In this document: piece by piece, positions 1,935 through 64,000 of the stretch | Position numbering within the stretch: the stretch's first letter is position 1 | How the letters are laid out: the number at the start of each line of letters is the position of its first letter | From: Octopus bimaculoides | Taxonomy: Eukaryota | DNA: 64,000 nucleotides | Assembly (NCBI RefSeq): GCF_001194135.2 | Contig: NC_068987.1 | Coordinates: 24,112,581 to 24,176,580 of the forward strand | Reading direction: 5' to 3' | Notes under the pieces: model-generated | The model's database searches: none | Told to the model about the DNA's origin: nothing | Seen by the model: only the letters and a program-made list of their open reading frames with translations | Position numbers and translations under genes: made by a program

Positions 1935-3843
1935 GTGAAGGTGGTTGAAGGTGATGCCATGCAAGCTGGCTATAAAGGCGAACTACGACAAACTTATCTT
2001 TGCATGTTGGAATGTTCACACCCTCCTTGATGATGTTTCACATGATGAGCCGGACACTCGATGACCCCCACGACGCACTGCTATTGTAGCCACTGAACTC
2101 AAGCGCTACAATGTCGACATTGCTGCACTCAGTGAGACTCGTTTCCCTGATGAGGGTTCCCTCACTGAAGAAGCTGGTGGATACACCTTCTTCTGGAAAG
2201 GACATCCCTCTGGGATGCCCCATTTGCATGGGGTTGGTTTCGCAATAAAGAACAGCCTATTGCAGAAAATTCCTGGAGTATCCTCCTGTATCAGCGAGTG
2301 CCTAATGACAATCAAAATCCTACTTTCAAACAAACGCTTTCTAACAATTCTCAGCGTTTATGGACCAACTCTTGACTCTGATGAAGAGGTAAAAGACGCC
2401 TTCTATGATTCTCTGCATACTGCGTTTCAGAACATCTCCCGATCAGACAAGATCGTACTCATGGGTGACTTCCACTCCCGTGTTGGGTGTGACAATGCCG
2501 TCTTCACGGCACAGGGAAAATGAACGCTAATGGACAGAGACTACTCACTTTCTGCTCTGAGTATGACCTGTGCATCACTAACACCCTCTTTAAAAAGCGG
2601 GACATTTACAAAACATCATGGATGCACCCGCATTCCAAAAAGTGGCATCTAGACTACATCATTATCCGTTGTCAAGACATGGGTGATGTCCTCCATACTC
2701 GCGCAGTGCATGGAGCAGATTGCTGGTCGAACCACAATCTTATCCGCTCCAAGCTTAGAATCAACATTCAACCCCCTAGTCGACAGCATCAAAACGACTA
2801 AACACCACGAAACTGTATGATCCTGAGAATCGTGGCCTTTTTCAAGATCACCAATGAACCAGCCAGCCTTCAGCAGAACCTAAATGTTGTGTGCAACACC
2901 TATCATCGGGCTGGACTCCAGGTCAACACCAAGAAAACAGAGATCCTTCAATGCTCCAAAAATGGTTTACCCCATGACTCTTTCGATCCAAGACAACCAG
3001 CTAAAGAACACCGAGAAATTCACCTATTTGGGTAGCATCATCTCAAGCAATGGGATCATTGACCACAAAATTCAGAATCGCATCCACCTTGCCTTCTCCG
3101 CTTTTGGATGTCTCAAGGATAGGGTCTTCCTTAATCCTGATCTGAATCTCTCCACGAAAATCGAGGTTTATTGTGGTTTATTTGTTGTGGTTTCCATGCT
3201 TCTGTATGCCTCAGAAACCTGGACACTATATTCATCATGTCAAACTCCTCAAATTCTTTCACATCCGCTGTCTCCAGCGAATTCTTCATCTGACCTGGAA
3301 GGACAAGATCCCACATATGGAGATCCTGAGATGAGCAAAATTGACCAGCATGATCCTCGAACATCAACTGCACTGGGTGGGGCATGTTATCAGGATTCCA
3401 GAAAACCGTATACCCAAGATTGTCCTTTTCGAGAAGTTAGCAGAGGGTAACTGACCGCATGGAGGTCCAAAGAAGCGATGTAAAGATTATCTCAAGAAAT
3501 CCCTGAAGCTCTGCAACATCCTCCCTGGTAAAATTGAAACACTGGCCACAGACCGTACTACCTGGAGGGGTATGGTCAAAACTGGTACGCAGCATTTTGA
3601 GGATGAGCGGACTAGACTTCACAAGGAAAATCAGAAACAGCTCAAGGAATGTCAGCAAAATCCTAGATGAGCTCATCTTCGTTGGAGCCCTCTTCGCTGT
3701 TCTCAGTGTAATCGGACATGTGCCTCTAGAATCGGCCTTTTCGGCCATGAGAGGGCCTGCCAACGCCATCAAGACAACCCCTAAGGATCAAAGACAACGT
3801 CATCATTTGTCAAGATGGACTGCCAAAGAAGAAGAGAAGAAGG
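1935..3843 (+). mobile_element. Degenerate RTE-clade LINE, internally deleted
   Basis: APE endonuclease motifs (LIFACWNVHTLLD, DIAALSETR, MGDFHSRVG, HLDYII, DCWSNH), then only the distal RT/thumb (FTYLGSIIS, LLYASETW), a C-terminal Cys/His region and a (GAA)-rich tail at ~3825-3843. Many frameshifts and stops. Confidence 0.85.
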
Positions 3844-4717: not shown

Positions 4718-6013
4718 CTATTGTTCTAAGGTTTGACTTCCGTGTGACTTTTTCTTATGATTAGTTAAAATTCTATTCTCAGAGAAAGTTTTACCACAGA
4801 TGTCACAATGATAGGGTTTCTCACCTGTGTGGACAGGCCTGTGACGAGTTAAGCTTTGATTATCAGAATATGTTTTACCACAAATATCACAGCTATATGG
4901 TCTCTCACCTGTATGGCCACGTACATGAATTGTTAAATGACCTCTTTGAGAAAATGTCTTACCACAGATATCACAATGATATGGTTTTTCACCTGTATGG
5001 ACACGTACATGTTGAGTTAGATGACCATTTTGAGAGAATGTTTTACCACAAATATCACAATGGTATGGTTTCTCACCAGTGTGTGTGCGTATGTGTCTAG
5101 TTAATGTACTATTGTCAGAGAATGTTTTACCACAAATATCACAGTGGTATGGGTTGTCACCAGTGTGTATGCGTATATGGTTAGTTAAACCACTACTGTT
5201 AGAGAATGTTTTTCCACAGATATCACAGTAAAATGGTTTATGTCCTGTGTGAACTTGCTTGTGACTAGTTAAACTACTATATGCAGAGAAATTTTTCCCA
5301 CAGACTGTACAATTGTATGGTCTCTCACCAGTATGAATACGTACATGAAGAGTTAAGTGACTACTCCGAGAGAAGGATTTACCACAGATATCACAGTGAA
5401 ATGGATTCTCACCTGTGTGAATACGTACATGTTCAGTTAAGTGACCATTCTGAGAGAATGTTTTCCCACAGATATCACAGTGGTATGGTTTCTCACCAGT
5501 ATGCATACGTATGTGTTTCGTTAATCCACTTCCATCAAAGAATCTCTTTCCACATATATCACATGGGTATGGTTTCTCACCAGTGTGCATACGAATGTGC
5601 TTAGTTAAACTATTACTGTCAGAAAATGATTTTCCACAGATATCACAGTGGTATGGTTTCTCACCAGTGTGCATTCGTATATGTCTAGTTAATGCACTAT
5701 TGTCAGAGAATCTTTTCCCACAGACATCACAGTGGTATCGGTTGTCACCAGTGTGCATGCGAATGTGCCTACTCAATGTGCTGCTACCAGAGAATGTTTT
5801 CCCACAGATATCACAGTGGTATGGGTTGTCACCAGTGTGCACACGTACATGTCTAGTTAATGCACTGTTGTCAGAGAATCCTTTCCCACAAATATCACAG
5901 TGGAATGCTTTATCTCTGACTTGTTTGTGATTAGCTAACAAAGAGAAAATTTTCTCTTCGATATCACAACGGTATGGTTTCTCACCCATGTGAGTATCTT
6001 TATAATTAGTCAT
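4718..6013 (-). CDS. C2H2 ZNF gene 1, 431 aa, 14 intact fingers after 2 degenerate repeats
   Basis: Uninterrupted ORF of CxxC-x12-H-x3/4-H repeats with TGEKP-type linkers. Starts at the ATG of an ancestral helix (MTNY), with A at -3. Confidence 0.85.
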   Translation of the reverse strand: MTNYKDTHMGEKPYRCDIEEKIFSLLANHKQVRDKAFHCDICGKGFSDNSALTRHVRVHTGDNPYHCDICGKTFSGSSTLSRHIRMHTGDNRYHCDVCGKRFSDNSALTRHIRMHTGEKPYHCDICGKSFSDSNSLTKHIRMHTGEKPYPCDICGKRFFDGSGLTKHIRMHTGEKPYHCDICGKTFSQNGHLTEHVRIHTGENPFHCDICGKSFSRSSHLTLHVRIHTGERPYNCTVCGKNFSAYSSLTSHKQVHTGHKPFYCDICGKTFSNSSGLTNHIRIHTGDNPYHCDICGKTFSDNSTLTRHIRTHTGEKPYHCDICGKTFSQNGHLTQHVRVHTGEKPYHCDICGKTFSQRGHLTIHVRGHTGERPYSCDICGKTYSDNQSLTRHRPVHTGEKPYHCDICGKTFSENRILTNHKKKSHGSQTLEQ

Positions 6014-6627
<614 letters not shown>

Positions 6628-7234: not shown

Positions 7235-7390
7235 CATATGTGGTTGAGATGTTTTCTTCCCAACAAAGAGGTTTCGGGTACAATCCCACTGCATGCCACC
7301 TTGGGCAAGTATCTTTTACTATCACCTTGGGTCAACCAAAGTTTTATGAGTAGATTTGGTAAATGAAACTGAAAGAAGCCCTTTGTGTAT
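7235..7390 (+). mobile_element. Degenerate tRNA-derived SINE head
   Basis: Diverged match to 60656-60830 (CCTTGGGCAAGT...GAAACTGAAAGAAGCC). Confidence 0.65.
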
Positions 7391-7581
7391 TTAATCATCA
7401 TCATTTTAAGATCCAGTTTCCCACACTTACAGAATTTGTTGAAGCAGATTTTCTATGACCAGATATGTTTTTCATGGAAAAGTGGAAGCAAATGGCACAG
7501 CATGCCTCATGGTGACATAATGCAATATCAAGACAAGGAGGCACAAATTACACACACACACACACACACACATACACATAA

Positions 7582-7905
7582 GGCACAGGCATGGCTGTGT
7601 GATAAGAAGCTTGCTTCCCAACCACATGGTTCCAGGTTCAGTCTCACTGTGGGCAAGTGTCTTTTACTGTAGCCTTGGACCAACCAAAGCATTGTGAGTG
7701 AATTTGGTAGACAGAAACTGAAAGAAGTCCGTCGTATATATACATGTGTGTGTGTGTGTGCGTGTTTGTCCCCACCACCATGACTTGACAATCGATGTTG
7801 GTGTGTTTACGTTCCCATAACTTAGAGGTTCGGTAACAGAGATCAAAACCCGTTAAAGCAGTGCTCCAGCATGACAAGTCAAATGACTGAAACAAGTAAA
7901 AGATT
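7582..7905 (+). mobile_element. tRNA-derived composite SINE
   Basis: Head GGCTGTGTGATAAGAAGCTTGC...GGTTCAGTC, internal (TG)n and family 3' end. Homologous to 60656-61065. Confidence 0.8.
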
Positions 7906-14775: not shown

Positions 14776-16425
14776 CTTGACACATGTAAATCTGTATTCA
14801 ATTTCATTACTATGTTTCTGAATATTCTAGAAAAAAAGTTAAAAGAAATTTCAAGCTTATGCTTGAGAAAGAAAGACGATAACACTATATAAAAATATTG
14901 CAAATAGGTGAGATTTAAAAAAAATTAAACTGTGAATAGTTTATTGAAGAATTTCTCAACTATGGAGAATATCTGGCTGGTGTGGTATGATGAAATAGAT
15001 TGTTTTAAAAAAAGTTAGGCATACAGGGTGTCCAAAAGTTATCTTTACAACTATTACATTAAAGTTGAGCTCCATCAATCAACTTCTTTGCATATTAAAT
15101 AAATATCATTGAAGTTTTAATATTTAAATTACTTTTCTTTGTCTTTAAAGAGGCTTATTATATACTTATTTTTCATTTCTAACTGAATCTTTCAAATTGT
15201 AATGGTAATTTATGAACAACCTGTATTAAATACTAAAACAGTTATTTATAATTTTCCATATAATCAATTATTATACTCTGATGTATTCACATTAGCATCC
15301 TCATCTTGGTTGTTATTGTCACAATGTTTTGGATGATGTATCCTCCAGCCTTCTTCGAGTGTCTGTCATATTCAGTTACATACAATAGATTATTCTTATG
15401 CTGTTGTTCAAAGACATTCTCTTCCATCTGATACTGCAAGATCAGTCTGCATAAACCAGAGATTAGCTGGAGTTTAGCTGAATTCAGCTAAACTATGAAT
15501 AAAGAGGAAAAGAAAGTTTATACTTCTTAATTTCCACCAACTGTCCAATGGGGTAACAAAGTAATGAATATAATCATAAAGTGCTAACTGTAGTAGTTTT
15601 GCTAGTTGAGTTATATAATAGCTTAAGTTAGTAGGTTATCAGGGGGTTCAGTTGAAACTCTGACTATGTTACTGAATATAGCAGGAACCTAATAGTTGGA
15701 GGTTAAAATGGTTGAAACCTTATGACAACAACCACAATGAAAGTACTCATCTGAATATCCCTATTTAATAATAACCTACATAAATGTTGGATGGTTATTT
15801 GATTCCGCTAGTTATTTTATGTCATATAGAATAAGGTAAAAGAGAGTAAATGAGATACAAGAGATTTAACATCAGTGACATAGGGTGACTGTAAATACTA
15901 GGTTTATTGGCAGGAGTAAGAAAGGGAATAAATACAGAGTACTTATGGGAGGAGTTATCCAAATGGGAAATTTGCTTCATTTCATTGTATTTCAAGGAAA
16001 TATTTTTCTTTTGAAAATTAATACTCATTTTATCATTTTGTACAAGTATTAAGAAATTTGATAAAAATTGAATTATAATTATTATATGCCATTCACAGTG
16101 GCGATGGGTAATATTCTAGTATCAGTGTATAATAATAATTCCTTAACTCAGAACTCATGACAAAATTTTAATTAAAGTAACATAAAATTAAATGGATCCA
16201 ACTTTCATTCATTTCTGTAATAAAAATATTACATTGACTGTCACATAAAAATTCCAATATTTCATTGTATTGTCTCACAAAATTTCCTTCTCATGAAGTA
16301 ATAATAATTTGCACAATTTCTTCCAAGTAATTCTATGTTTAATGGTTTATCTTGCATTTAACGTCATTAGTGGTTAGTCAAACTACCATTTTTAACAGCT
16401 GCTCTTCAACTGAAACCATGAGGAG

Positions 16426-17598
16426 TCACTCACCATTGTGAATACGTCTGTGGCGAGATAAATTCTGGTTATCAGCATATGATTTACCACAAATATCACA
16501 GCTGTATGGTCTTTCACCTGTGTGACCACGTATATGAAGAGTTAAATGACCTTTTTGAGAGAAGGATTTACCACAACTATCACAGTGAAATGGATTCTCA
16601 CCAGTGTGAATACGTACATGTTGAGTTAAATGACCATTTTGAGAGAATGTTTTACCACAGATATCACAATGATATGGTTTCTCCCCAGTGTGCATACGTA
16701 TGTGTATAGTTAAACTATTACTCACAGCAAATCTTTTCCCACAGATATCACAGTGGTATGGGTTGTCACCCGTGTGCAAGCGTTTATGTCTATTTAATGT
16801 GCTATTACCTGAGAATGTTTTTCCACAAATATCACAGTAAAATGGCTTCTCTCCTGTGTGAACTTGTTTGTGACGAGTCAACTTATTAGATTCAGAAAAC
16901 GTTTTCCCACAGATATCACAATGGTATGGTTTCTCACCAGTGTGAATGTGTTTGTGCTTAGTCATACTACCTCTTTCGGAGAATGTTTTCCCACAGACAT
17001 CACAGTAATAGGGCTTTTCATTTGTGTGAATGTATTTGTGTCTATTCAAATCATAACCTCGGGAAAATGTTTTAGCACAAATTCCACATTGATATGGTTT
17101 CTCTCCTGTGTGGACACGCTTATGAACAGTTAACACACTATTTTGTGAAAATGTTTTACCACAAATATCACAGTGATATGGTTTCTCACCTGAATGAGTA
17201 TATTTGTGTGCAGACAAATGACCTTTCTGAGAGAATGTTCTACTACAAACATCACAGTGGTATGGCTTTTCACCAGTATGAATACGTTTGTGCTTGGTCA
17301 AATTACTACTGTCAGTGAAAATTTTGCCACAAATTATGCATTGGTAAATTTTCTCCTCTTTCTGAACATTTTTAAGCAAAGACAACGGACCATTTTTGGT
17401 AATGTTAAAATATTTAAGTTTTGAGTTTGTCTGTTGTAAGTTTTGCTTAAATAACAAGTTACATTTAGTAAATGTCTTATTGTTGATGTTTAAGTGATAT
17501 GCTGTTTTCTGTGCATTTACATATGTCTGAAGAGATGTGTCACTGAAGTTGAGCTGTGTTTGAGCATACAATTGACTTTTGTAAAGTTTATCCTCCAT
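16426..17598 (-). CDS. C2H2 ZNF gene 2, 390 aa, 11 fingers, MEDKL leader
   Basis: Intact ORF with TGEKP linkers. Ends at TGA inside the last linker, with a decayed 12th finger downstream. Confidence 0.92.
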   Translation of the reverse strand: MEDKLYKSQLYAQTQLNFSDTSLQTYVNAQKTAYHLNINNKTFTKCNLLFKQNLQQTNSKLKYFNITKNGPLSLLKNVQKEEKIYQCIICGKIFTDSSNLTKHKRIHTGEKPYHCDVCSRTFSQKGHLSAHKYTHSGEKPYHCDICGKTFSQNSVLTVHKRVHTGEKPYQCGICAKTFSRGYDLNRHKYIHTNEKPYYCDVCGKTFSERGSMTKHKHIHTGEKPYHCDICGKTFSESNKLTRHKQVHTGEKPFYCDICGKTFSGNSTLNRHKRLHTGDNPYHCDICGKRFAVSNSLTIHIRMHTGEKPYHCDICGKTFSQNGHLTQHVRIHTGENPFHCDSCGKSFSQKGHLTLHIRGHTGERPYSCDICGKSYADNQNLSRHRRIHNGE

Positions 17599-21729: not shown

Positions 21730-23420
21730 AGTCAGCTTATTCTTATTCTTGCAGCTATGCTCTTGGAGCAGCCACCTCCGCTACTGACTGGGTCACCTAG
21801 ATAGCGGAAGCTATCAACTACCTCTAGCTTACCCTCCTGGCATTTGATAGAGTCTATTGTCTGTACATTTTTAGTGTTTATTGTACCAGTGCACCTTCCA
21901 CACACAAAACCCATTTTCCCAGTTAACCTTCCTCTGATATTGTTGCTCCTCTTATGTATCTGTAGCTTGCACTAGGTACATCTTATGGAATTTCTATCTT
22001 CACTTTTCCTACAGATGAGCAGGGTCATCTACCTGAAGGGATTTGTGATTTGTCTGCTTTCCTACTTACTAAGACTTTGGCTTTTGCTGGGTTAACTTTA
22101 AAGCCCTTTGATTCTAGACCTTGCTTCTACATCTGAAACTTCTTCTCTAGTTCTGGTAGTGTGATTCAGCAATCAGAACAAGGTCATCAGCACAGAGAAG
22201 CTCCCAAGGGCAACCCATCTTAAATTCCTCCGTTATTGCCTGGAGGACTATGATGAGCAAGGGGGGGGGGCTCAGGACTGATCCTTGGTGAACCCCTACT
22301 TGTACCTTGAATTCATTACTATATTTGTTGCCAACCCTCACCTTACTGACAGCATCCCTGTACATGGCTTGTACATCTCTCACCAACCACTCATCTGTCC
22401 CTAGGTTCTGCATTGACCACCAGATAAGGGATCAGGGGACCCTGTCAAAGGCTTTCACCATGTCAATAAAAGCCAAGTACAGAGGTTTGTCTTTGCCTAG
22501 GTACTTCTCCTGCAGCTGTCTTACAAGAAATATAGCATCAGTAATGCTTCTCCTTGGCACAAAACCAAACTACATCTCATCTAGACTAACTCTCTCCCTA
22601 ATTAGTTGGGTTATGACCCTCTCTGTGACTTTCATCACCTGATCCAATAAATTGATATTGCTGTAATTATTTCTAACTCATCACCTTTACCTTTGTAGCA
22701 TTTGACTATGATGCTGCTACACCATAATCAACTGGGCATGACTCCTTTATGTACTACCTGATTAACTATATGGGTGACTAAACTATAATCCACACTGCCA
22801 GATATTTTAAGCATCTCAGCAGTTATTCCTGATGGGCCGGAGACTTTCCCCATCTTCATATCCTTCATAGCTTTGTCTACAATGCTACTGTCTATTCGGA
22901 TTTCTGGTCCCTCTGTTGGAACAACATTACACAGACTCTCCTTCTCCCATGAGTTCTCTGTATTTAGTCGCCTTTCATAGTGGCACTTCCAAACCTCTTT
23001 CCTTGCAGAGTCACTAACTGTAAGTGAACCATTATCCATGTGAACACGCTTCTCCCACACCACAGTTTTCCCTGACACACTGCCTTGCAAACTGAAACAC
23101 TTCAAGCCACTGGTCCTCTAGTTACAGAACATTAGCAAACCCCTTCCCTTCTGCTTCACCCCTGGCTAAGTATACCTACTTCCTAGCCTCCCTTCTAGCT
23201 GCCTGATACAGTTCCTTGCTACCACCACCCTTCCAGTCCTTTCAAGCCTGATTCTTAGCTCTAATGGCTCTGTCAACTTCATTGTTCCACTACTAAGTTA
23301 TCCTCTATATTGCAAGTCTGTAACTCCTCCTCATCAAATGCTTCAGTTAGGAAGTCCCTAAACCTCTGATTATTCAGAGTCCTTAAGATTCCAGATCTTT
23401 CTTTTCCAAACTGCCTTGCT
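21730..23420 (-). mobile_element. Degenerate RTE-like LINE (linker, RT, thumb)
   Basis: GVHQGSVLSP and LCADDLVL RT motifs at 22147-22413; GKVSGPSGITAEMLK at 22728-23105; FVCGRC...FRYLGD at 21732-21914. Frameshifted. Confidence 0.85.
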
Positions 23421-23618: not shown

Positions 23619-23886
23619 NNNNNNNNNNNNNNNNNNNNNNNNNNNNNNNNNNNNNNNNNNNNNNNNNNNNNNNNNNNNNNNNNNNNNNNNNNNNNNNNNN
23701 NNNNNNNNNNNNNNNNNNNNNNNNNNNNNNNNNNNNNNNNNNNNNNNNNNNNNNNNNNNNNNNNNNNNNNNNNNNNNNNNNNNNNNNNNNNNNNNNNNNN
23801 NNNNNNNNNNNNNNNNNNNNNNNNNNNNNNNNNNNNNNNNNNNNNNNNNNNNNNNNNNNNNNNNNNNNNNNNNNNNNNNNNNNNNN
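23619..23886. other. Assembly gap (N run)
   Basis: Run of N flanked by (TA)n. Confidence 1.
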
Positions 23887-23921
<35 letters not shown>

Positions 23922-24601: not shown

Positions 24602-25660
24602 TTATTCTTTTATTGTTTGTTTTGCATGTGCTTTTTCTTTATGATTAGACAAACTCCTATTCTCATTGTAAGTTTTACTACAGATATCACAATGATATGG
24701 TTTTACACCTGTGTGAACAGGTTTGTGACGATTTAAATTCTGATTATCAGCATATGATTTACCACAAATGTCACAGCTATATGGCCTCACACCTGTGTGA
24801 CCACGTATATGAAGTGTTAAATGACCTTTCCGTGAAAACATTTTACCGCAGATATCACAATGGTATGGCTTTTCACCTGTGTGAATACGCACATGTTGAG
24901 TTAAATGACCATTCTGTGAGAATGTTTTGCCACAGATATCACAGTGAAATGGTTTCTCACCAGTGTGCAAGCGTATGTGTTTAGTTAATCCACTCTTGTC
25001 AAAGAACCTTTTTTCACAGATATCACAAGGGTATGGTTTCTCACCGGTGTGAATACGTACATGTTGAGTTAAATGACCATTCACCGAGAATGTTTTACCA
25101 CAGATTTCACAACGGTATGGATTATCACCTGTGTGCATGCGTACATGCCTAATTAATGTACTGTTGTCAGAAAATGTTTTGCCACAGATATCACAGCGGT
25201 ATGGTTTGTCACCAGTATGAGTGCGTGTATGTCTAGTTAATCTACTATTACTAGAGAATGTCTTTCCACACATATCACAGTGGAATGGCTTGTCTCCTGA
25301 GTGAACATGTTTGTGATTAGTTAAATTATTACATACAGAGAAGGTTTTCCCACAGATATCACAGTGGTATGGTTTCTCACCGGTGTGAGTACGAATATGA
25401 AGTGTTAAATGACCCCTTTGGGAAAATGTTTTACCACAGATATCACAGTGAAATGGATTGTCACCTGTGTGAATGCGTACATGTTGAGTTAAATGACCAT
25501 TTGCAGAAAATGTTTTGCCACAAATGTCACAGTGGTATGGTTTCTCCCCAGTGTGAATGCGTATGTGTTTAGTTAGTATGGTTTTGCCAGAGAATGCTTT
25601 TCCACAGATATCACAGTGATATGGTTTCTTACCAGTGTGAGCATTTTTGTGATTAGTCAT
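24602..25660 (-). CDS. C2H2 ZNF gene 3, 352 aa from the first ATG, 12 intact fingers
   Basis: The ORF track start at 25762 is TTG. The first ATG (25660, MTNHKNAH, A at -3) is homologous to the gene 1 start. Confidence 0.8.
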   Translation of the reverse strand: MTNHKNAHTGKKPYHCDICGKAFSGKTILTKHIRIHTGEKPYHCDICGKTFSANGHLTQHVRIHTGDNPFHCDICGKTFSQRGHLTLHIRTHTGEKPYHCDICGKTFSVCNNLTNHKHVHSGDKPFHCDMCGKTFSSNSRLTRHTRTHTGDKPYRCDICGKTFSDNSTLIRHVRMHTGDNPYRCEICGKTFSVNGHLTQHVRIHTGEKPYPCDICEKRFFDKSGLTKHIRLHTGEKPFHCDICGKTFSQNGHLTQHVRIHTGEKPYHCDICGKMFSRKGHLTLHIRGHTGVRPYSCDICGKSYADNQNLNRHKPVHTGVKPYHCDICSKTYNENRSLSNHKEKAHAKQTIKE

Positions 25661-26110
25661 ATTATCTTTTTCAGAGAAAGTTTTGCCACAGACACCGCTG
25701 TAATATAGCTGTCTACTTGCGTGAATGGACTTCTGCAGAATGTTATAGAACAAATACAACAATATGTTTTGTCTCCTGTATGAGTAAATTTGTGAAGAAT
25801 TTATTTATCAATTTAGAGGATGTTCTCCTCCATATACCAAAGTTATATGGGCTCTCACCTGAATGAATATATTTGTGTGTAGTCAAATGATCTTGCTCAA
25901 AGAATAGTTTACTACAAGTATCACAGTGGTATACCAGTATGACATTAGTGCTTAGTCAAATTATTGTTACAGAAGAAACATTTGCCACAGATAATGTATT
26001 GCTAAATTCTTTCATCTTAGCAATTGTTTAAATTAGGTATTAGACTGAATAAATGTTTAATTGATATGATTTCTTATGTGTATCTACCAACACATGTCAG
26101 ATAATATATT
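25661..26110 (-). pseudogene. Decayed 5' part of gene 3
   Basis: Finger remnants with deletions, frameshifts and stops; ancestral ATG region missing. Confidence 0.75.
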
Positions 26111-30709: not shown

Positions 30710-30744
30710 CAGTTGAGGAAAAACTGGTATTTTGTGAATTTTCC

Positions 30745-30898
30745 NNNNNNNNNNNNNNNNNNNNNNNNNNNNNNNNNNNNNNNNNNNNNNNNNNNNNNNN
30801 NNNNNNNNNNNNNNNNNNNNNNNNNNNNNNNNNNNNNNNNNNNNNNNNNNNNNNNNNNNNNNNNNNNNNNNNNNNNNNNNNNNNNNNNNNNNNNNNNN
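30745..30898. other. Assembly gap (N run)
   Basis: Run of N. Confidence 1.
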
Positions 30899-31089
30899 AA
30901 ACCCTTTTTGGGGTCCGGAAAATGGGGTGTGGTGGGATGGGGGTAAAACCCTTGGAAATTTTCACCCTACCCCCATTTTCAAATATTTTTTGCTATTTCT
31001 TTCTTTACCCATAATTTTAGATAACATTTTGCAGAAATACGTTTTCGAGAGAGTGTTGATTACATTAGATTGAAAATTCAAAGAAGTTT

Positions 31090-35329: not shown

Positions 35330-36616
35330 CTATTGTTCTATGGGCAGACTTTCATGGGATTTTTGTTTATGTTTAGTTAAACTCCTACTTTCAGAATAAG
35401 TTTTACCACAGATATCACAATGATATGGTTTGACACCTGTATGAACAGGTTTGTGACGATTTAAATTCTGATTATCAGCATATGATTTACCACAAATATC
35501 ACAAGTGTATGGTCTCACACCTGTATGAACACGTACATGAAGTGTTAAATGACCTTTTTGAGAAAATGTTTTACCACAAATATCACAGTGAAATGGATTC
35601 TCGCCTGTGTGAATACGTACATGTTGGGTTAAATGACCGTTTTGAGAGAACGTTTTCCCACAGATACCACAATGATATGGCTTCTCACCAGTGTGCATGC
35701 GTATGTGTATAGTTAAGCTATTACTCTCAGAGAATCTTTTACCACAGATATCACAGTGGTATGGATTGTCACCAGTATGCATGCGTATGTGTCTAGTTAA
35801 TGCACTATTACCAGATAATGTTTTCCCACAGACATAACAACAGAATGGTTTTTCTCCTGTGTGAACTTGTTTGTGACTAGTCAAATTATTACATACAGAG
35901 AATGTTTTTCCACAGATATCACAATGGTATGGTTTCTCACCGGTGTGAGTACGCTTGTGTTTAACCATGCTTCCTCTTTGTGAGAATGTTTTCCCACAGA
36001 CATCACAGTGATATGGTTTTTCGCTTGAATGAATGTACTTGTGTCTATTTAAATCAGAACTTCGGGAAAATGTTTTAGCACAAATACCACACTGATACGG
36101 TTTCTCTCCTGTGTGAATACGTTTGTGAACAGTCAATTCACCATTTTGTGAAAATGTTTTTCCACAGATATCACAGTGATATGGTTTCTCACCTGAGTGA
36201 ATATATTTGTGTTTAGTCAAATGAGCTTGCTGAGAGAATGCTCTCCCACAAATATCACAGTGGTATGGTTTTTCACCAGTATGAATACGTTTATGCTTGG
36301 TCAAATTACCACTGTCAGAGAAAGTTTTACCACAAATTATGCATTGGTAAATTTTCTTTTCTTGCCGAACATTCTTATGCAAAGACAAAGAGTTGTTTTT
36401 AGTAATTGTTTTACTATAAATTTTAAAATATTTAAGCTTTGAGCTTGTATGAAGTAACTTTTGCTTAAATAAAGCATTAGATTGTGTGAATGTCTTTTTA
36501 ATGATGTTTGAACGATATGGTTCCTTTTGTTTATTTACACATGTCTGTTTAGGTAGGTCACTAGGTTCAGGATGTGTTTGCTCACAAACTTGACTCTCAC
36601 ACAGTTTATTCTCCAT
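35330..36616 (-). CDS. C2H2 ZNF gene 4, 428 aa, 12 fingers, MENKL leader
   Basis: Intact ORF, finger-by-finger collinear with gene 2. Confidence 0.93.
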   Translation of the reverse strand: MENKLCESQVCEQTHPEPSDLPKQTCVNKQKEPYRSNIIKKTFTQSNALFKQKLLHTSSKLKYFKIYSKTITKNNSLSLHKNVRQEKKIYQCIICGKTFSDSGNLTKHKRIHTGEKPYHCDICGRAFSQQAHLTKHKYIHSGEKPYHCDICGKTFSQNGELTVHKRIHTGEKPYQCGICAKTFSRSSDLNRHKYIHSSEKPYHCDVCGKTFSQRGSMVKHKRTHTGEKPYHCDICGKTFSVCNNLTSHKQVHTGEKPFCCYVCGKTLSGNSALTRHIRMHTGDNPYHCDICGKRFSESNSLTIHIRMHTGEKPYHCGICGKTFSQNGHLTQHVRIHTGENPFHCDICGKTFSQKGHLTLHVRVHTGVRPYTCDICGKSYADNQNLNRHKPVHTGVKPYHCDICGKTYSESRSLTKHKQKSHESLPIEQ

Positions 36617-37083
36617 AATTCTTCTATAAATATTGTAAAATATTCTGTTATTTTCAAATACTTAATGCAGAATAATAAACTTTTAAAACTTCTCAGCAAA
36701 TACCGTATTATAATGCATTTTTTCATAGAGTGAAAAGTGATATTTGACAAAGTCTGAAAATGTTTCAGACATAAAGGAACAGTTTCAAGATATTTTATTT
36801 AAGAGTTTCTCTTCCAAGATTTCAATCTTGGAACTAAAATTCAGCAAGTAAACTGACTTCAGTTCTCAAGATATACTCAGATATGAATGACATTACACAT
36901 AAATCAACTGAATTTTCATGTCTCTATTACTGTTTATAACCTAATTTAAATTTCACAGCAACTCCAATAAAGCTGTTAAGAACAGTTGTGTTATCGATAA
37001 GGTCAGTCTTCCGTTGTCAAAATGTGACATATTTCTTGATATATCTTGAGTTAGCAATTATCATCTCAGTGTCATCACAAATT

Positions 37084-52708: not shown

Positions 52709-53881
52709 ATGGAAGACAAACTGGAGGAGAGTCAGGCCTGTGATGAAACACAGCCTGAATCTAGTGAGGTATCTAATCAGGAGTGTGTAGATACAGAGAA
52801 AAAAGCTTATCATTTTGACATTCATAAGAAGACATTCTCACAATATAATGTACTTCTTACAAGCATAAAACTTAAATATTCCAAAATGTGTAACAAAACA
52901 AGTGCTAAGAGCCGTTCATTCTCTAAGGGTATTCAGTCGGATCAGAGTGATTTTGAATGCTTAATCTGTGGTAAAATATTCTCTCGGAAATCTTATTTGA
53001 CTAGACACAAACGTATACACAGAAGCAAGAAATCATACCGCTGTGATATCTGTGACAGAGCTTTCAATGACAGCAGTACTTTGACGAATCATAGACGTAT
53101 TCATACTGATGAGAAGCCATATCACTGTGATATTTGTGGGAGAAGGTTCACTCAATTTGGTCATTTGAGTAGACACAAATATACTCACTCAGGAGAGAAA
53201 CCACACCGTTGTGATATTTGTGGGAAAGCATTCTCACAGGTTGATAGTTTAACTCGTCACATACGTATTCACACAGGAGAGAAACCATATCAATGTGGTG
53301 TTTGTGGTAAAACATTTTCTCGAAGCTCTTATTTAAGTGTTCACAAATCTGTTCACACCAGAGAAAAGCCACACCGCTGTGACATCTGTGGGAAAACCTT
53401 CTCTGGGAGAGGTAACATGACGAATCACAAACGTATTCACACTGGGGAAAAACCATACCATTGTAATATATGTGGGAAGACCTTCTCTGGATGCAACAGT
53501 TTAACTAGTCATATACAAGTTCACACGGGAGATAAGCCATACCACTGTGATATTTGTGCAAAAACGTTCTCTACCAGTAGTAGATTAACTAGACATATAC
53601 GCACTCATACTGGTGAAAAACCATTCCATTGCAACACCTGTGGTAAAACATTCTCTCAAAATGGTCATTTAACTCAACATGTACGAGTTCACACTGGTGA
53701 AAAACCATTTCACTGTGATATCTGTGGTAAAACATTCACTCAGAGAGGTCATTTAACACTTCACATACGTGGTCATACAGGTGAGAGACCATACAGTTGT
53801 GATATTTGTGGTAAAGCATATGCTGATAATCAGAGTTTAACTCGTCATAAACCTGTGCACACAAATAAGAAAAAATCATGA
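52709..53881 (+). CDS. C2H2 ZNF gene 5, 390 aa, 11 fingers, MEDKL leader
   Basis: Intact ORF. Remnant of a lost terminal finger and tail at ~53882-53955. Confidence 0.92.
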   Translation: MEDKLEESQACDETQPESSEVSNQECVDTEKKAYHFDIHKKTFSQYNVLLTSIKLKYSKMCNKTSAKSRSFSKGIQSDQSDFECLICGKIFSRKSYLTRHKRIHRSKKSYRCDICDRAFNDSSTLTNHRRIHTDEKPYHCDICGRRFTQFGHLSRHKYTHSGEKPHRCDICGKAFSQVDSLTRHIRIHTGEKPYQCGVCGKTFSRSSYLSVHKSVHTREKPHRCDICGKTFSGRGNMTNHKRIHTGEKPYHCNICGKTFSGCNSLTSHIQVHTGDKPYHCDICAKTFSTSSRLTRHIRTHTGEKPFHCNTCGKTFSQNGHLTQHVRVHTGEKPFHCDICGKTFTQRGHLTLHIRGHTGERPYSCDICGKAYADNQSLTRHKPVHTNKKKS

Positions 53882-56800
53882 TATCTATCAAGAAATGTTG
53901 AGAAAGGACAATAGTTTGATAATCACAAAGTCATGGTACACAAACCATTAAACAATATACTTTGCTGAAAGAAAAAAATGTCCAAATTACTACTTCATGA
54001 CACTATACAGGAATTCCTGTAAGATCGGTAATATAATAAAATGTCATGAAACTTCATGGAAACTAGATAAAAGCCATATTTATATATATAAAACTTATGT
54101 GATTTGAGAATATTTTGCAATATGTCAAAGGAAATTATAAATCACCCTATTGTGCTACTGTTTTTGACTTTCTAAAACAATGTTTTATCATTTGCAATCA
54201 GATGCATTACATGGTTGAAAAGTTTTCAAAAATAATATTCGCACACAGGTTAACAAATATCACTAATTTGTAATATTTTTAAAAAAATTTGATCTTTTCA
54301 ATAAACATTTTTTTTTTTTACCCAGAACATTCTTCAATGTGGTATAATTCACAAATTTACTTTGGAATAATTTTCTTATTTAGTCTGATTGCACAGACAT
54401 TTGTCATTATTTTCATGTTATGAGCAATCGACAATTGTGTTTTGTGACTGAAATACTTTTGTGTTTTTCAATAATTAAAATTATTATTATCTGAGAAAAC
54501 ATTTTTGTCAGTTTTTTTATGCAATAGTTTGTGTATTTAGAAGAAGCATGGTTTCTGTAAAAATTTGATTTTAATTTAAAGAAAACATAAAATTGTAAAG
54601 TTGAGAATAGAGCCATGGCTTGGAAAAGGACAATGTAAGAACTGAAAAAGTGTTTTTTAATACAACTAGAAACATTTAGCTAATGAATTAGAACAGAGCA
54701 GAGTGCATTGTTAACTCTTTTCTTACCGTACACTGCCTTTATTTTGATTCTAAAAATGATGAAGGATTTACTAAAATATATTTATCCTTATTAAGTTGAT
54801 GTTTCAAATTTGATTTGACATGAAAATTTTATAGATTTTTATTGAGATCCCTGTAGAACAGGGAAGTTGTATCATAGAACTAGGAGCAGTCTTAGGCAGG
54901 TTGGTCTCAACCAGGTTCACTTGTAACATAGTGATAACCACATAATAGTGAGAGATTTGCAGGTTTGATAGGATTAGATAGAAGAGGGTAATATAGAAGA
55001 ATATGTTGAGGCTAAGGTGGATGATAAATGTTAGGTGTCTCTTGCTAGTTGAAATTAAAAGTTGTCTGCTTGCTAACAACTTAGTACTTCGTTTGCCAAG
55101 TCAGAAAAATGATAACATTAAATGATGTAGAAGAAGTGGAGGGACTCTGTTCAAATCTGACAAATAAGGTACTTTGTTTTTAACAAGCAATTATGAGCTA
55201 AACTAAATTCAAGCAAGGTACTTTGTTTCTAACAAGCAGATTATGAGCTAAATTAAATTCATTGTGTTTTTAAATGTTTTTGCAAAGGTACCTGAGAGAA
55301 AAATGTTCATGACAAAAACATGGTAAATTTTTCCATTGTTTGTAGCACAAATATTTAATCAGTTCTCATTCTAAAAAAAATAAAATTTAACAGCCGTTTT
55401 GTATGAACCCATGTAAACTTATTCTGGTTCAGCCTTGCCTGCATTACATGATGGTGGAATATTAATAGGATTGAAATTACTTCATACTGAGGGGAAAATA
55501 TTTCAAAGGGTTACTATGAAATTCATTCTTTTGATTCCAACCTCTCTGACACTACCTGTGATGCTATGACAAACTTCTTATTTTAAAGTAATATAATTGT
55601 TCCATCAAAATTACCTGTTCTGTTCCAAACACCAGCTTTATAACAGCAAAATTATTCTATCAAATTCTTTCGTATATTTTTAAATTTTTTGAAATAGAAA
55701 GGCAGTATATTTTCACAGAAATATAGGAACAAAAGGGTTTAAAAAATAATTGCGGATGTAGAAGAGTGCTTGCCTTATTACCTCTGGTTTACCCAGTTAC
55801 CATGCTGTTACCTACAAAATCCTCATGGTTACAGCTTAGTGGGAGGTCATGGTTCATGCACTCTCATTATTATTCTTTAGTGTCTTATATTCCCTCCATG
55901 TTTTTCAACAATTGAATACATGTTGATATAACTTATAAGATTTGTATTTGAACATCTGACATTATGAAATTGAACAGAATGCTTGCAAAACATTATTTAT
56001 TGACAACAATGAACAATAAAATACAAAAGCAACATAAGTCACTTTCTCTTCAATTCATGGGAGTAAAGAACTGAGAATCCATGCACTCAGCCACAGAGAA
56101 ATTGACTTTGTGGTGATGGTGAATCTTCACCATTCAAAGTTAAGGACTCAGTTATATAACCTACTGAATTAATGTGTAAGTGGCTGAGTATTCCACAGAC
56201 ATGAACCTTAGATGTAATTCTCAGTCAGAATCAGCAAGGCACAGTATTAACAAAGCTGTACATTCTAAATTACACGTACAATCCACCCAGTGGGTTTTTA
56301 TAAATTTCTGTCTACCCAATTTCACTCAAAAAGTATGGGTCAATCCAAGGCTATAAAAAATGGCATTTGCCCAAGATGCCACCCAGTGGATCAAACCCAG
56401 GACCCAGTAGTTGCAAAGTGAACTTCTTAACCATTTGGTTACATTGCACCCAGAGCCACTACCATCCTCTAACTTCTGATTGTCCATTCTTTAGTATACT
56501 ATAAATGCTGTTTAAATATAAGAGTGGTAGTTGATAATGAGCTGTGAATAATGGATGAAGCATAATGATGGCAGAAACACATGTCCTGCAATTCAATAAC
56601 ATCATTCATAGCCCAATATCTATAAAGGGAATTTCTCTCCAGTTTCTTTCCAGTTTCATGTTTGAATGCACAAATGTGTTAAATATGATGATATACACCT
56701 ATCATCCATATAAATTGGTTTTGTTAAGAGAACTGAATGAAATATGCATAATTATATCAAATTAACAATATTTCATTGTTAGAAACTTGGCAAAGGATAG

Positions 56801-62854: not shown

Positions 62855-64000
62855 ATGGAGGTGAAACTTTATGTGAATCAGGTTTGTGATCAAACACAGC
62901 CTGAATCTAATGACATATCTCATCAAATATGTGTAGATCCACAGAAGAAATCATATCTCTTAAACATCAATAAGAAAACATTCACACAATCAAATGCCAT
63001 ATTGAAACAAAAGATGCTTCAGAAATGTTGGAAGAGGAAATATGTTTACAGTAAAACAATTGCTAAACTCTCTAAGAGTACTTTAACAAGTCAGAAAGTT
63101 TGTAAATGCTCAGTATGTGGTAAAATATTCTCTCAAAATTGTCACATGACTAAACACAAGTGTATACAGAGAAGCAAGAAAAAACACCATTGTGATATCT
63201 GTGGCAGAACCTTCTCTGAGAGCAGTACTTTGACTAATCATAAACGTATTCATACTGGTGAAAAGCCATACCACTGTGATATTTGCAGTAGAACATTCAC
63301 TCAGTATGGTCATTTGAGTAGACATAAATATACTCACTCAGGTGAGAAACCATATAACTGTGATATCTGTGGGAAATCATTCTCTCAGAGTGATAAATTA
63401 GCTATTCACAAACGTATTCACACAGGTGAAAAACCCTATCAGTGTGGTATTTGTGCTAAAACATTTTCTCGAAGTTCTGATTTGAATAGGCACAAGTACA
63501 TTCACACAAATGAGAAGCCATACAGCTGTGATGTCTGTGGGAAAACCTTCTCTGGGAGAAGTAATATGACTAACCACCAACGTACTCACACAGGTGAGAA
63601 ACCATACTACTGTGAAATCTGTGGAAAAACATTCTCTAGTAAATTATCTACACACAAACGAATCCATACAGGTGAAAAACCATACAACTGTGATATATGT
63701 GGAAAAAAATTCTCTCAGAATGGTCATTTAACTCAGCATTTACGTGTTCACACAGGTGAGAAACCATACCACTGTGATATTTGTGGTAAAACATTTTCTC
63801 AAAGTAGTCATTTAACACTTCATGTACGTGGTCACACAGGCGAGAAACCATATAGTTGTGATATTTGTGGTAAAACATTTTATGATAATCAGAGTTTAAC
63901 TCGTCATATACCTGTTCACACAGGTGAAAAACCATATCATTGTGATAGCTGTGATAAAAGTTTCTCTAAGAAAAAGATTTTGACTAATCACAAGCAAAAA
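62855..64000 (+). CDS. C2H2 ZNF gene 6, partial (runs off the window), MEVKL leader, about 11 finger repeats
   Basis: Translated by hand: open from ATG 62855 to the window end with no stop, which explains its absence from the ORF track. Finger 1 lacks its last His; finger 7 is 2 aa short. Confidence 0.9.
   Translation, partial: MEVKLYVNQVCDQTQPESNDISHQICVDPQKKSYLLNINKKTFTQSNAILKQKMLQKCWKRKYVYSKTIAKLSKSTLTSQKVCKCSVCGKIFSQNCHMTKHKCIQRSKKKHHCDICGRTFSESSTLTNHKRIHTGEKPYHCDICSRTFTQYGHLSRHKYTHSGEKPYNCDICGKSFSQSDKLAIHKRIHTGEKPYQCGICAKTFSRSSDLNRHKYIHTNEKPYSCDVCGKTFSGRSNMTNHQRTHTGEKPYYCEICGKTFSSKLSTHKRIHTGEKPYNCDICGKKFSQNGHLTQHLRVHTGEKPYHCDICGKTFSQSSHLTLHVRGHTGEKPYSCDICGKTFYDNQSLTRHIPVHTGEKPYHCDSCDKSFSKKKILTNHKQK

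What the first reader, a model, noticed from the sequence alone, without database searches (positions are those of the whole stretch)
36350..36616. The N-terminal leader is three fossil zinc fingers in exact 28-aa register: a polarised finger conveyor belt
In gene 4, residues 6-33, 34-61 and 62-89 align to the C2H2 template without gaps. Unit 1 keeps C11, L21 and P33. Unit 2 reads YRSNIIKKTFTQSNALFKQKLLHTSSKL (Y, KTF, L, last H, T..K). Unit 3 keeps KT, L77 and H80. True finger 1 starts at Y90, which is 34+56. Gene 5 has YHFDIHKKTFSQ at the same place, and genes 2 and 6 agree. Together with the damaged first finger of gene 6 and the further decay in genes 1 and 3, this gives a gradient: fingers are born by internal duplication and die from the 5' end, while intact finger number stays at about 10-14. 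The fossil repeats remain in frame in four genes and may have been exapted as an effector or interaction domain.
Basis: partly seen in the sequence, partly recalled or inferred. Interest (0 to 1): 0.75.

Follow-up and report, generated by a model that had tools for sequence, protein, structure and literature searches.

The report
Three decayed zinc fingers as leader
The first 89 amino acids of this octopus zinc-finger gene are three worn-out copies of its own 28-residue zinc-finger repeat, which is real but is an ordinary kind of relic that sits at both ends of such genes, not proof of a one-way "conveyor belt".

Summary
The window is Octopus bimaculoides chromosome CM046607.1 and holds six tandem C2H2 zinc-finger genes.

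**Fossil fingers in gene 4 (35330-36616, minus strand)**
- Residues 6-33, 34-61 and 62-89 are the three best matches to the cluster's finger profile, in protein and in DNA.
- DNA identity to the 84-nt finger consensus is 48, 43 and 44 of 84. The best chance match in the window is 41.
- A profile built from the leaders alone finds ordinary C2H2 arrays in 1.84 billion proteins, 97% in the predicted register.
- hhalign against true fingers gives E = 8e-8, gapless.
- The units have lost their zinc ligands, get no Pfam hit and have no confident AlphaFold fold.
- They are not neutral: dN/dS is 0.3-0.5.

**The "polarised conveyor belt" is only partly supported**
- 5' decay is heavy. Genes 1 and 3 independently lost the leader plus five or six fingers.
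- Internal duplications occur in those same two genes.
- Fingers also die at the 3' end (genes 2 and 5, and two genes of another octopus subfamily) and internally (gene 6).
- Fossil units flank arrays at both ends in a mixed sample of animal zinc-finger proteins.

Degenerate fingers are already known in vertebrate KRAB-ZNF genes. This is a new member of a known kind.

The parts
36602..36616 (-). Start codon and residues M1-L5 (MENKL) of gene 4. This is the conserved opening of the family-wide N-terminal cap ME.[KE]L.
   Evidence: ORF listing. NCBI's annotated product is the same 428 aa. The same opening occurs in genes 2, 5 and 6 and in O. sinensis, O. vulgaris and other relatives.
36518..36601 (-). 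Fossil finger unit 1 (aa 6-33, CESQVCEQTHPEPSDLPKQTCVNKQKEP). Three of the four zinc ligands are replaced.
   Evidence: DNA identity to the finger consensus is 48/84, the highest non-finger score in the window. Protein shuffle p = 2e-3. It lies inside the gapless hhalign match. The majority consensus of the four paralogues is 48/80 identical to the finger consensus.
36434..36517 (-). Fossil finger unit 2 (aa 34-61, YRSNIIKKTFTQSNALFKQKLLHTSSKL). It keeps Y1, K8-T9-F10, L16, H23 and T24 and has lost both Cys and the first His.
   Evidence: Best PSSM offset in all four genes. Shuffle p = 1e-5. DNA identity 43/84. Relatives carry an intact finger starting at exactly Y34.
36350..36433 (-). Fossil finger unit 3 (aa 62-89, KYFKIYSKTITKNNSLSLHKNVRQEKKI). 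It keeps K8-T9, L16 and H19.
   Evidence: Second-best PSSM offset. Shuffle p = 1e-5. DNA identity 44/84. Gene 5 still has Cys at unit position 6 here (MCNKTS).
35330..36349 (-). Twelve intact C2H2 fingers of gene 4 in 84-nt register, plus the stop codon.
   Evidence: Regex and six-frame scan. Pfam zf-C2H2 gives 12 stretches, all at residue 90 or later. TRF reports period 84 with 11.5 copies.
17347..17598 (-). Gene 2 leader. Same three units, with a 5-aa deletion in unit 3.
52709..52951 (+). Gene 5 leader. Units 1-3 carry 6-aa and 2-aa deletions and are followed by an intact extra finger 'A'.
62855..63184 (+). Gene 6 leader (units 1-3) plus the damaged finger A at 63101-63184 (CKCSVCGKIFSQNCHMTKHKCIQRSKKK), whose last His is replaced by Gln.
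   Evidence: The O. vulgaris orthologue P0121 has His at this position.
5906..6567 (-). Gene 1: remnants of units 2-3 and of the first six fingers. They carry at least 6 stop codons and at least 4 frameshifting indels. The 431-aa ORF restarts at Met16 of finger 'F' (ATG at 6011-6013).
25622..26004 (-). Gene 3: remnants of the first five fingers with at least 6 stops and several indels. The lesions differ from those of gene 1. The first in-frame ATG is again Met16 of finger 'F' (about 25658-25660).
16343..16426 (-). Gene 2: fossil of the last finger ('M'), lying after the stop codon.
   Evidence: DNA identity 45/84. The alignment to the last finger of gene 4 shows a 4-nt deletion and stops.
53876..53955 (+). 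Gene 5: fossil of the last finger ('M') overlapping and following the stop codon. Coordinates are approximate.
   Evidence: The alignment to the last finger of gene 4 shows different indels from those of gene 2.
63605..63682 (+). Gene 6: internal finger with a 2-aa deletion (YYCEICGKTFSSKLSTHKRIH), giving C-x2-C-x10-H spacing.

Best explanation
The region encodes the N-terminal 89 residues of a poly-C2H2 zinc-finger gene whose annotated protein is one uninterrupted 428-aa reading frame. After a five-residue start peptide it consists of three 28-residue copies of the gene's own finger repeat. They have lost three or four of their zinc ligands and can no longer be zinc fingers.

**Origin (shown).** The units are former N-terminal fingers of the array. 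Unit 1 belongs to a 33-residue N-terminal cap shared by a wider octopus ZNF family, in which an intact finger starts at Y34. Units 2 and 3 died in the ancestor of this six-gene cluster, before O. bimaculoides and O. vulgaris split.

**Why they stay in frame (inferred).** The initiator ATG lies upstream of them. Any frameshift would therefore cost the whole downstream array, unless translation restarts at an internal ATG, as appears to have happened in genes 1 and 3.

**Present role (inferred, not shown).**
- The leader evolves 2-3 times faster than the true fingers in amino acids, but still under purifying selection.
- It is predicted unfolded.
- It has an acidic-to-neutral cap (net 0 to -8) followed by a very basic stretch (net +6 to +13).
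- The most likely role is a flexible basic arm next to the DNA-binding array, serving non-specific DNA or nuclear-import contacts, with a short conserved N-terminal motif.

**Evolutionary setting.** Finger loss happens at both ends of the arrays and occasionally inside them. Gain happens by internal duplication. The prominence of 5' fossils in proteins is partly a matter of visibility: 3' fossils are cut off by stop codons and end up in the 3' UTR.
For: - **Register-specific similarity.** Seen in protein, in DNA, profile against profile, and by the leader-only HMM retrieving canonical C2H2 arrays in register.
- **Relatives with the same cap.** Several have the same 33-aa cap and an intact finger at Y34. 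One O. sinensis ORF has at least 35 intact fingers after the cap.
- **Age.** The O. vulgaris orthologue of gene 6 has nearly the same leader.
- **Selection.** Leader dN/dS is 0.29-0.53, against 0.18-0.25 for seven orthologous fingers. pN < pS with pooled Fisher p = 7e-7 over two independent pairs.
- **Structure.** The leader has pLDDT 33-50; the following true fingers have 76-86.
- **Charge.**
- **Dead fingers elsewhere.** 3' and internal dead fingers are shown. Fossil-like units flank arrays at both ends in 268 animal ZNF proteins.
- **Annotation.** NCBI annotates the same 428-aa product.
Against: - Generic Pfam zf-C2H2 gives no hit in the leaders even at E <= 10, so the homology rests on family-specific profiles.
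- Unit 1 is weak in protein (p = 2e-3). It is only 32/84 and 36/84 in DNA in two more distant family members, so a finger origin for the family-wide cap is less secure than for units 2 and 3.
- The four leaders are paralogues, so they amount to one ancestral observation.
- dN/dS comes from about 80 codons by Nei-Gojobori counting in AT-rich DNA with dS of 0.5-1.2, so it is approximate.
- The AlphaFold model used only four sequences.
- No expression, translation-start or binding data were available. The functional part is inference.
Confidence: 0.8

Rival explanations
1. One reading: a polarised conveyor belt. Fingers are born by internal duplication and die only or mainly from the 5' end, which keeps the number of intact fingers at 10-14.
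For: - All six genes carry 5' fossils.
- The first finger of gene 6 was recently damaged.
- Genes 1 and 3 lost the leader plus five or six 5' fingers through different lesions. These same two genes carry intragenic duplications and still have 14 and 12 intact fingers.
- The O. vulgaris gene-5-like gene has a degenerate first finger fused to unit 2.
Against: - The last finger is dead behind the stop codon in genes 2 and 5, independently.
- Gene 6 has an internal damaged finger, and the O. vulgaris gene-5-like gene has an internally truncated one.
- Two genes of another octopus subfamily, with MEKSEK... leaders, have 3' fossils.
- Independent events in the cluster number about 6, 2 and 1 (5', 3', internal), which is not significant.
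- N-flank and C-flank fossil frequencies are similar in a mixed animal sample.
- Compensation between births and deaths rests on n = 2.
Confidence: 0.15
2. The leader is an in-frame spacer with no function of its own. It is kept only because the start codon lies upstream of it.
For: - No zinc ligands, no Pfam domain and no confident fold.
- In-frame indels of 2-6 aa are tolerated among paralogues.
- The cap region reaches dN/dS of 1.04 in one pair.
- Genes 1 and 3 apparently do without the leader altogether.
Against: - pN is about half of pS in two independent paralogue pairs (p = 7e-7 pooled).
- Twenty-one residues are invariant among the four paralogues despite dS of 0.5-1.2.
- The basic character is retained or enhanced: +6 to +13, against +5 for two true fingers.
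Confidence: 0.25
3. The leader, or its 33-residue cap, has been exapted as an effector or interaction domain. This would be the octopus counterpart of KRAB or FiNZ, born from a dead finger.
For: - The cap ME.[KE]LC..Q has a conserved length, with the next unit starting at Y34. It is shared by relatives in O. sinensis, O. vulgaris and a contig assembled from a public sequencing run, species not given; the sequences are.
- It is acidic to neutral. The 28-aa FiNZ domain of cyprinid ZNFs is likewise glutamate-rich (PMC10547256).
- It is under purifying selection overall.
Against: - The cap is the least constrained part of the leader among the window's paralogues (dN/dS 0.41-1.04).
- Only about nine N-terminal residues are recognisably conserved across the family.
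- No structure is predicted and there is no match to any Pfam family.
- Only seven representative clusters with this cap were found.
Confidence: 0.15
4. The resemblance to fingers is chance, or comes from composition and codon usage.
For: Pfam finds nothing. TRF does not extend the array into the leader. The leader is K/T/S-rich, like fingers.
Against: The signal is register-specific. Only offsets 6, 34 and 62 stand out among all offsets and frames. All three units exceed every non-ZNF position in the 64-kb window. Shuffles that keep composition fail to reach the observed scores. hhalign gives E = 8e-8. The leader-only HMM finds real fingers in register.
Confidence: 0.01

Closest known systems
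Degenerate (non-functional) zinc-finger motifs in vertebrate KRAB/poly-ZNF genes
   Same: - In-register finger repeats that have lost Cys or His ligands occur within and beside arrays. Finger remnants also lie after stop codons in 3' UTRs.
- PMC2865497 states that degenerate non-functional fingers occur within a sequence and after truncation by an in-frame stop, and describes eleven complete and degenerate fingers in the ZNF252 3' UTR.
- PMC2667407 cites ZNF443 with 4 degenerate motifs out of 19.
- From memory, not checked here: Looman et al. 2002 (Mol Biol Evol 19:2118) describe such mechanisms for KRAB-ZNFs.
   Different: - Here the fossils form the very N-terminus of the protein, directly after the start codon, in a gene with no separate effector-domain exon.
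- The decay is deeper, with 3-4 ligands lost, so Pfam is blind to it.
- The host is a cephalopod. The two cephalopod/metazoan ZNF papers I checked do not mention it (PMC12513265, PMC10547256).
FiNZ domain of cyprinid fish ZNFs (PMC10547256)
   Same: A short, lineage-specific N-terminal sequence, stated there to be 28 aa and glutamate-rich, that heads a large expanded ZNF family lacking KRAB.
   Different: FiNZ is reported as highly conserved. The octopus cap is only loosely conserved and shows a DNA-level trace of finger origin.
Array turnover by unequal, in-register recombination in tandem ZNF arrays (KZNFs, PRDM9)
   Same: Whole-finger gains and losses in 84-nt register. Genes 2 and 4 lack one unit that genes 5 and 6 have. 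Genes 5 and 6 lack fingers that genes 2 and 4 have. Block duplications occur in genes 1 and 3.
   Different: That model has no directional component. The data here do not require one.
'Degenerate' fingers that still fold, such as ZNF750 (PMC10465944)
   Same: Sequence-degenerate C2H2-like units may retain structure or function.
   Different: ZNF750's finger keeps a CCHC ligand set and binds zinc. The units here keep at most one or two potential ligands and are predicted unfolded.

Membership tests
C2H2 zinc finger domain (Pfam PF00096) | Four zinc ligands with C-x2-4-C-x12-H-x3-5-H spacing | tested here: not met
   At the four ligand positions, unit 1 keeps only Cys at position 6, unit 2 only His at position 23 and unit 3 only His at position 19.
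C2H2 zinc finger domain (Pfam PF00096) | Match to the curated family profile | tested here: not met
   No zf-C2H2 hit in any of the four leaders at E <= 10. In the full protein all 12 stretches lie at residue 90 or later.
C2H2 zinc finger domain (Pfam PF00096) | Beta-beta-alpha fold | tested here: not met
   The AlphaFold2 model gives the leader pLDDT 33-50, with no hairpin-helix units. Fingers 1-2 have pLDDT 76-86 and show the expected strands and helix. The alignment was shallow, so this is weak evidence.
Degenerate / fossil zinc finger (descended from a finger repeat) | Same 28-aa / 84-nt register as the adjoining intact array | tested here: met
   The top offsets are 6, 34 and 62, with the first true finger at 90.
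Degenerate / fossil zinc finger (descended from a finger repeat) | Residual similarity to the family's fingers beyond chance, outside the ligand positions | tested here: met
   Scores on non-ligand columns give z = 3.1, 6.9 and 4.6. DNA identity is 48, 43 and 44 of 84, against a background maximum of 41. hhalign E = 8.4e-8.
Degenerate / fossil zinc finger (descended from a finger repeat) | An intact finger at the homologous position in relatives | tested here: met
   For unit 2, intact fingers start at Y34 in P0174 (O. sinensis), P0251, and also P0203 and P0249, which have variant spacing. For units 1 and 3 no relative with an intact counterpart was found.
Known N-terminal ZNF effector domains (KRAB, SCAN, BTB, ZAD) | Profile match in the region N-terminal to the fingers | tested here: not met
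   Pfam scan of the four leaders gave only two sub-threshold, unrelated hits.
FiNZ-like lineage-specific N-terminal ZNF domain | A short conserved N-terminal sequence shared by a large lineage-specific ZNF family, with repressor function | tested here: inconclusive
   The cap ME.[KE]LC..Q with the next unit at Y34 is shared by at least 7 representative clusters plus the window's genes. Conservation is loose. Family size and function are not testable with these tools.
   The cluster shows about 6 events at the 5' end, 2 at the 3' end and 1 internal. Other octopus loci show 3' fossils. In a mixed animal sample the N flank is 29-39% and the C flank 33%. The sample is too small and not genome-wide.
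   Intragenic closest-relative fingers occur only in gene 1, and repeated J/K types in gene 3. These are the two 5'-decayed genes, so n = 2.

The most novel reading that the evidence does not exclude
The 33-residue N-terminal cap that heads a whole octopus ZNF subfamily (ME.[KE]LC..Q, with the next unit at Y34) is itself a finger that died early and was kept as a lineage-specific effector or targeting motif. Under this reading, cephalopods built their counterpart of KRAB or FiNZ out of a dead DNA-binding repeat. The two further fossils in this cluster would show the same route in progress.
Probability: 0.12. Interest if true: 0.6.

Novelty: new member of a known kind. Interest (0 to 1): 0.3.

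Why it matters
- **Annotation.** In the fast-expanding octopus ZNF family, the "non-finger" N-terminus of some genes is decayed finger array. Domain-based annotation with Pfam misses this, so finger counts, array boundaries and "leader" domains in cephalopod ZNF catalogues may be mis-stated.
- **Material for studying finger turnover.** The cluster shows in-frame fossils, 5' parts abandoned with a restart at a conserved internal Met, 3' fingers cut off by stops, and internal duplications.
- **Limits.** It does not establish a new evolutionary mechanism. Comparable degenerate fingers are long known in vertebrate KRAB-ZNF genes.

Tried and rejected
- **Leader alone against the 5.8-billion-protein index:** no candidate shared enough words.
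- **First 232 aa of gene 4:** swamped by generic ZNFs. The five cephalopod hits lack this leader.
- **Pfam on the leaders:** no finger hit.
- **TRF:** the array does not extend into the leader.
- **AlphaFold2 on residues 1-145:** no confident structure for the leader, so no fold search was run.
- **Is the second half of unit 3 orthologous to finger A of genes 5 and 6 (an in-register deletion)?** DNA identities of 20-24/48 do not discriminate. Unresolved.
- **Between-species dN/dS on the gene 6 leader:** too few changes, and the O. vulgaris copy is frameshifted.
- **First-finger damage in short annotated family members (P0203, P0226, P0249):** rejected as evidence, because annotation splicing artefacts cannot be excluded.
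- **Gene 1 ORF lookup:** the product is not on record. P0226 is also not on record.
- **Literature:** Looman 2002, Huntley 2006 and Albertin 2015 are not held.
- **Pfam on the three TE-like ORFs of the window:** no hit.
Full report
**What is there.** The window comes from Octopus bimaculoides assembly GCA_001194135.2, chromosome CM046607.1, around 24.14 Mb. NCBI annotates exactly the 428-aa product of the ORF 35330-36616 on the minus strand. The window holds six tandem poly-C2H2 genes:
- g1, 4718-6013 (-)
- g2, 16426-17598 (-)
- g3, 24602-25762 (-)
- g4, 35330-36616 (-), the target
- g5, 52709-53881 (+)
- g6, from 62855 (+), running off the end of the window

In g4 twelve intact fingers follow each other at exactly 28-aa spacing from Y90. 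The flagged interval 36350-36616 encodes residues 1-89.

**Is the resemblance more than chance? Yes, by five independent tests.**
1. A position matrix built from the 64 intact fingers of the window, slid over the g4 leader, ranks offsets 34, 62 and 6 first, second and third of 62. Offset 34 is the best leader offset in g2, g4 and g5; in g6 it is second only to the damaged finger A, which counts there as leader.
2. Composition-preserving shuffles give p = 1e-5, 1e-5 and 2e-3 for units 2, 3 and 1. The signal remains when the four ligand columns are removed.
3. In DNA, identity to the 84-nt finger consensus is 48, 43 and 44 of 84 for units 1, 2 and 3. Over both strands of the whole window the background is 22.8 +/- 4.8, and no position outside a ZNF gene exceeds 41. 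The top three of 184 nucleotide offsets in the leader are 15, 99 and 183, that is residues 6, 34 and 62. The majority consensus of the four paralogous copies of unit 1 is 48/80 identical to the finger consensus and begins with Tyr.
4. hhalign of the four-leader profile against a profile of true finger triplets gives 94% probability, E = 8.4e-8 and 71 gapless columns, with leader position 6 aligned to finger position 1.
5. An HMM built from the leaders alone, containing no true finger, was searched against 1.84 billion representative proteins. It returned 171 proteins at E < 1e-3, the best non-orthologue at 2e-13. Nearly all are ordinary multi-finger proteins matched several times each. Of the 642 matched stretches that overlap a finger, 625 put the finger start at profile position 6 modulo 28.

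Two tests were negative, as expected for this depth of decay. Pfam zf-C2H2 sees nothing in the leaders. Tandem Repeats Finder ends its 84-nt array at 36334-36337, within the first intact finger.

**Where the units come from.**
- Relatives recovered by the leader HMM include proteins beginning ME.[KE]LC..Q, in several of which an intact finger starts at exactly Y34 (P0174, P0251; with variant spacing also P0203 and P0249).
- P0174 is O. sinensis. Its genomic ORF has the 33-residue cap followed by at least 35 intact fingers.
Units 2 and 3 of the window's cluster are former fingers 1 and 2.
- The O. vulgaris orthologue of g6 (P0121, locus L004) has almost the same leader, so the fossils predate that species split.
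- The finger origin of unit 1 is supported mainly by DNA in the window's four paralogues, which amount to one ancestral observation. In two more distant members it scores only 32/84 and 36/84. I hold it with less confidence than units 2 and 3.
- Genes 5 and 6 have one more unit than genes 2 and 4 between unit 3 and the next shared finger. Whether unit 3 of g4 is a fusion product could not be resolved.

**Is the leader just junk?**
- Pairwise Nei-Gojobori estimates give leader dN/dS of 0.29-0.53, against 0.18-0.25 for seven orthologous fingers. Leader dN is about 2.5-3 times higher.
- In the two phylogenetically independent pairs g4-g2 and g5-g6, pN is about half of pS (pooled Fisher p = 7e-7).
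- The leader is therefore relaxed but not neutral. The caveats are about 80 codons, AT-rich DNA and high dS.
- AlphaFold2 on a four-sequence alignment gives pLDDT 33-50 for residues 1-85 and 76-86 for the two true fingers that follow.
- The cap is acidic to neutral (net 0 to -8). Units 2-3 are very basic (+6 to +13, against +5 for two true fingers).
- My inference, not shown, is a flexible basic arm beside the DNA-binding array with a short conserved N-terminal motif.
- The reading frame itself needs no special explanation. The ATG lies upstream, so a frameshift in the leader would destroy the whole protein.

**The conveyor-belt idea. Evidence in its favour:**
- g6's first finger has lost its last His, while the O. 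vulgaris copy keeps it.
- Upstream of the g1 and g3 ORFs lie recognisable remains of the leader and of the first five or six fingers. Each set carries at least six stop codons and several frameshifting indels.
- The lesions differ between g1 and g3, so the two decays look independent.
- In both genes the first in-frame ATG is the conserved Met at position 16 of the same finger..G[SN]M.., which all six genes have. Downstream, 14 and 12 fingers are free of any lesion.
- With at least 10 lesions in about 600 nt upstream and none in about 1,300 nt downstream, a uniformly neutral pseudogene is very unlikely. The truncated ORFs are probably still under selection.
- These are also the genes with intragenic duplications.
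- The O. vulgaris g5-like gene has unit 2 fused to a degenerate next finger.

**Evidence against strict polarity:**
- The last finger lies dead behind the stop codon in g2 (16343-16426, 45/84) and in g5, through different indels.
- g6 has an internal finger with a 2-aa deletion. The O. vulgaris g5-like gene has an internally truncated finger.
- In another octopus subfamily, with MEKSEK... leaders, an O. sinensis gene and an O. vulgaris gene each end in a stop followed by fossil fingers.
- In 268 poly-ZNF proteins from many animals, ligand-less in-register units next to intact arrays look fossil-like in 29-39% of cases on the N side and 33% on the C side. Only 1.7% of internal units are broken.
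- That sample is neither random nor octopus-specific, so this is a rough control.
- Counted as independent events, this cluster gives about six 5', two 3' and one internal death. That is suggestive of a 5' excess but not significant.
- Part of any apparent polarity in proteins is a visibility effect. A dead 5' finger must stay in frame and remains part of the protein. A dead 3' finger is removed by a stop codon.

**Comparison with what is known.**
- Degenerate fingers inside and beside arrays, and finger remnants in 3' UTRs, are described for human KRAB-ZNF genes (PMC2865497; PMC2667407). From memory, Looman et al. 2002 also treat this, but I could not read it.
- The cephalopod C2H2 expansion paper (PMC12513265) contains none of the words I searched for (N-terminal, motif, linker, domain loss, pseudogene). 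The metazoan ZNF/TE paper (PMC10547256) never uses the word degenerate and uses N-terminal only for its fish domain.
- The latter paper describes FiNZ, a 28-aa glutamate-rich N-terminal domain of cyprinid ZNFs. It is a functional analogy worth testing for the octopus cap, not a demonstrated relationship.
- By the membership tests the three units are not C2H2 domains: ligands, Pfam profile and fold all fail. They are fossil fingers: register, residual similarity and an intact counterpart for unit 2 are all met.

**Verdict.** The first half of the interpretation, three fossil fingers in exact register, is right. The second half, a polarised conveyor belt with a steady finger number, is an attractive over-reading of six related genes, and 3' and internal deaths in the same window contradict its exclusivity. 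This is a new member of a known kind, of modest interest, with two side observations that would repay follow-up: the restart at a conserved internal Met in g1 and g3, and the possibly finger-derived family cap.

Noticed in passing
window 5906-6567 (-) and 25622-26004 (-): In genes 1 and 3 the leader and the first five or six fingers are riddled with stops and frameshifts, with different lesions in the two genes. The 14 and 12 fingers downstream are flawless. In both genes the first in-frame ATG is the conserved Met at position 16 of the same finger. This suggests 5'-truncated but still selected genes. The gene 1 ORF is not an annotated product.
   Followed up: partly
window 16343-16426 (-) and about 53876-53955 (+): Fossil copies of the last finger lie just after the stop codons of genes 2 and 5. 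They were produced by different indels, so 3'-end finger death happened twice independently.
   Followed up: yes
window 63605-63682 (+): Gene 6 has an internal finger with a 2-aa deletion (C-x2-C-x10-H). It probably does not work, although it sits in the middle of the array.
   Followed up: partly
window 36350-36433 (-) compared with 52874-53035 (+) and 63038-63184 (+): Genes 5 and 6 carry one more 28-aa unit (finger A) than genes 2, 4 and 1 between unit 3 and the next shared finger. Whether unit 3 of gene 4 is a fusion of old unit 3 and finger A could not be decided.
   Followed up: partly
L002:2001-5211 (+) (O. sinensis GCA_006345805.1, CM016888.1): An uninterrupted ORF has the same 33-aa cap followed by at least 35 intact fingers. 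The annotated product (P0174, 172 aa) is a spliced fragment of it, so the annotation probably under-calls this gene.
   Followed up: partly
L004:5800-8357 (+) (O. vulgaris GCA_951406725.2, OX597820.1): The orthologue of gene 6 has a frameshift inside unit 1 and an early stop after the third finger. An ORF with a mariner-type transposase domain (Pfam Transposase_1, E = 2e-23) lies at 7274-7825, just downstream. The copy is probably a pseudogene.
   Followed up: partly
L005:35624-36463 (+) and L006:10067-10732 (+): A second octopus ZNF subfamily has a 22-aa leader MEKSEK[IL]KE... Both examples end in a stop followed by fossil fingers.
   Followed up: partly
window 2215-3450 (+) and 22728-23105 (-): These ORFs look to me like fragments of a non-LTR retrotransposon (endonuclease and reverse-transcriptase pieces), lying between the ZNF genes. 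Pfam gave no hit, so this is unverified.
   Followed up: partly
window about 1720-1940, 23620-23900 and 30740-30900: Runs of N (642 bases in all), i.e. assembly gaps, flanked by TA/TATA-type simple repeats that translate as YIYIYI.
   Followed up: no
window 36617-36640 (-): A pyrimidine-rich stretch ending in AG lies 7 nt upstream of the gene 4 ATG (..TTTACAATATTTATAG|AAGAATTATG). Comparable AGs lie 10-25 nt upstream in genes 2, 5 and 6. This may be a splice acceptor, so the coding exon may begin just before the start codon.
   Followed up: no
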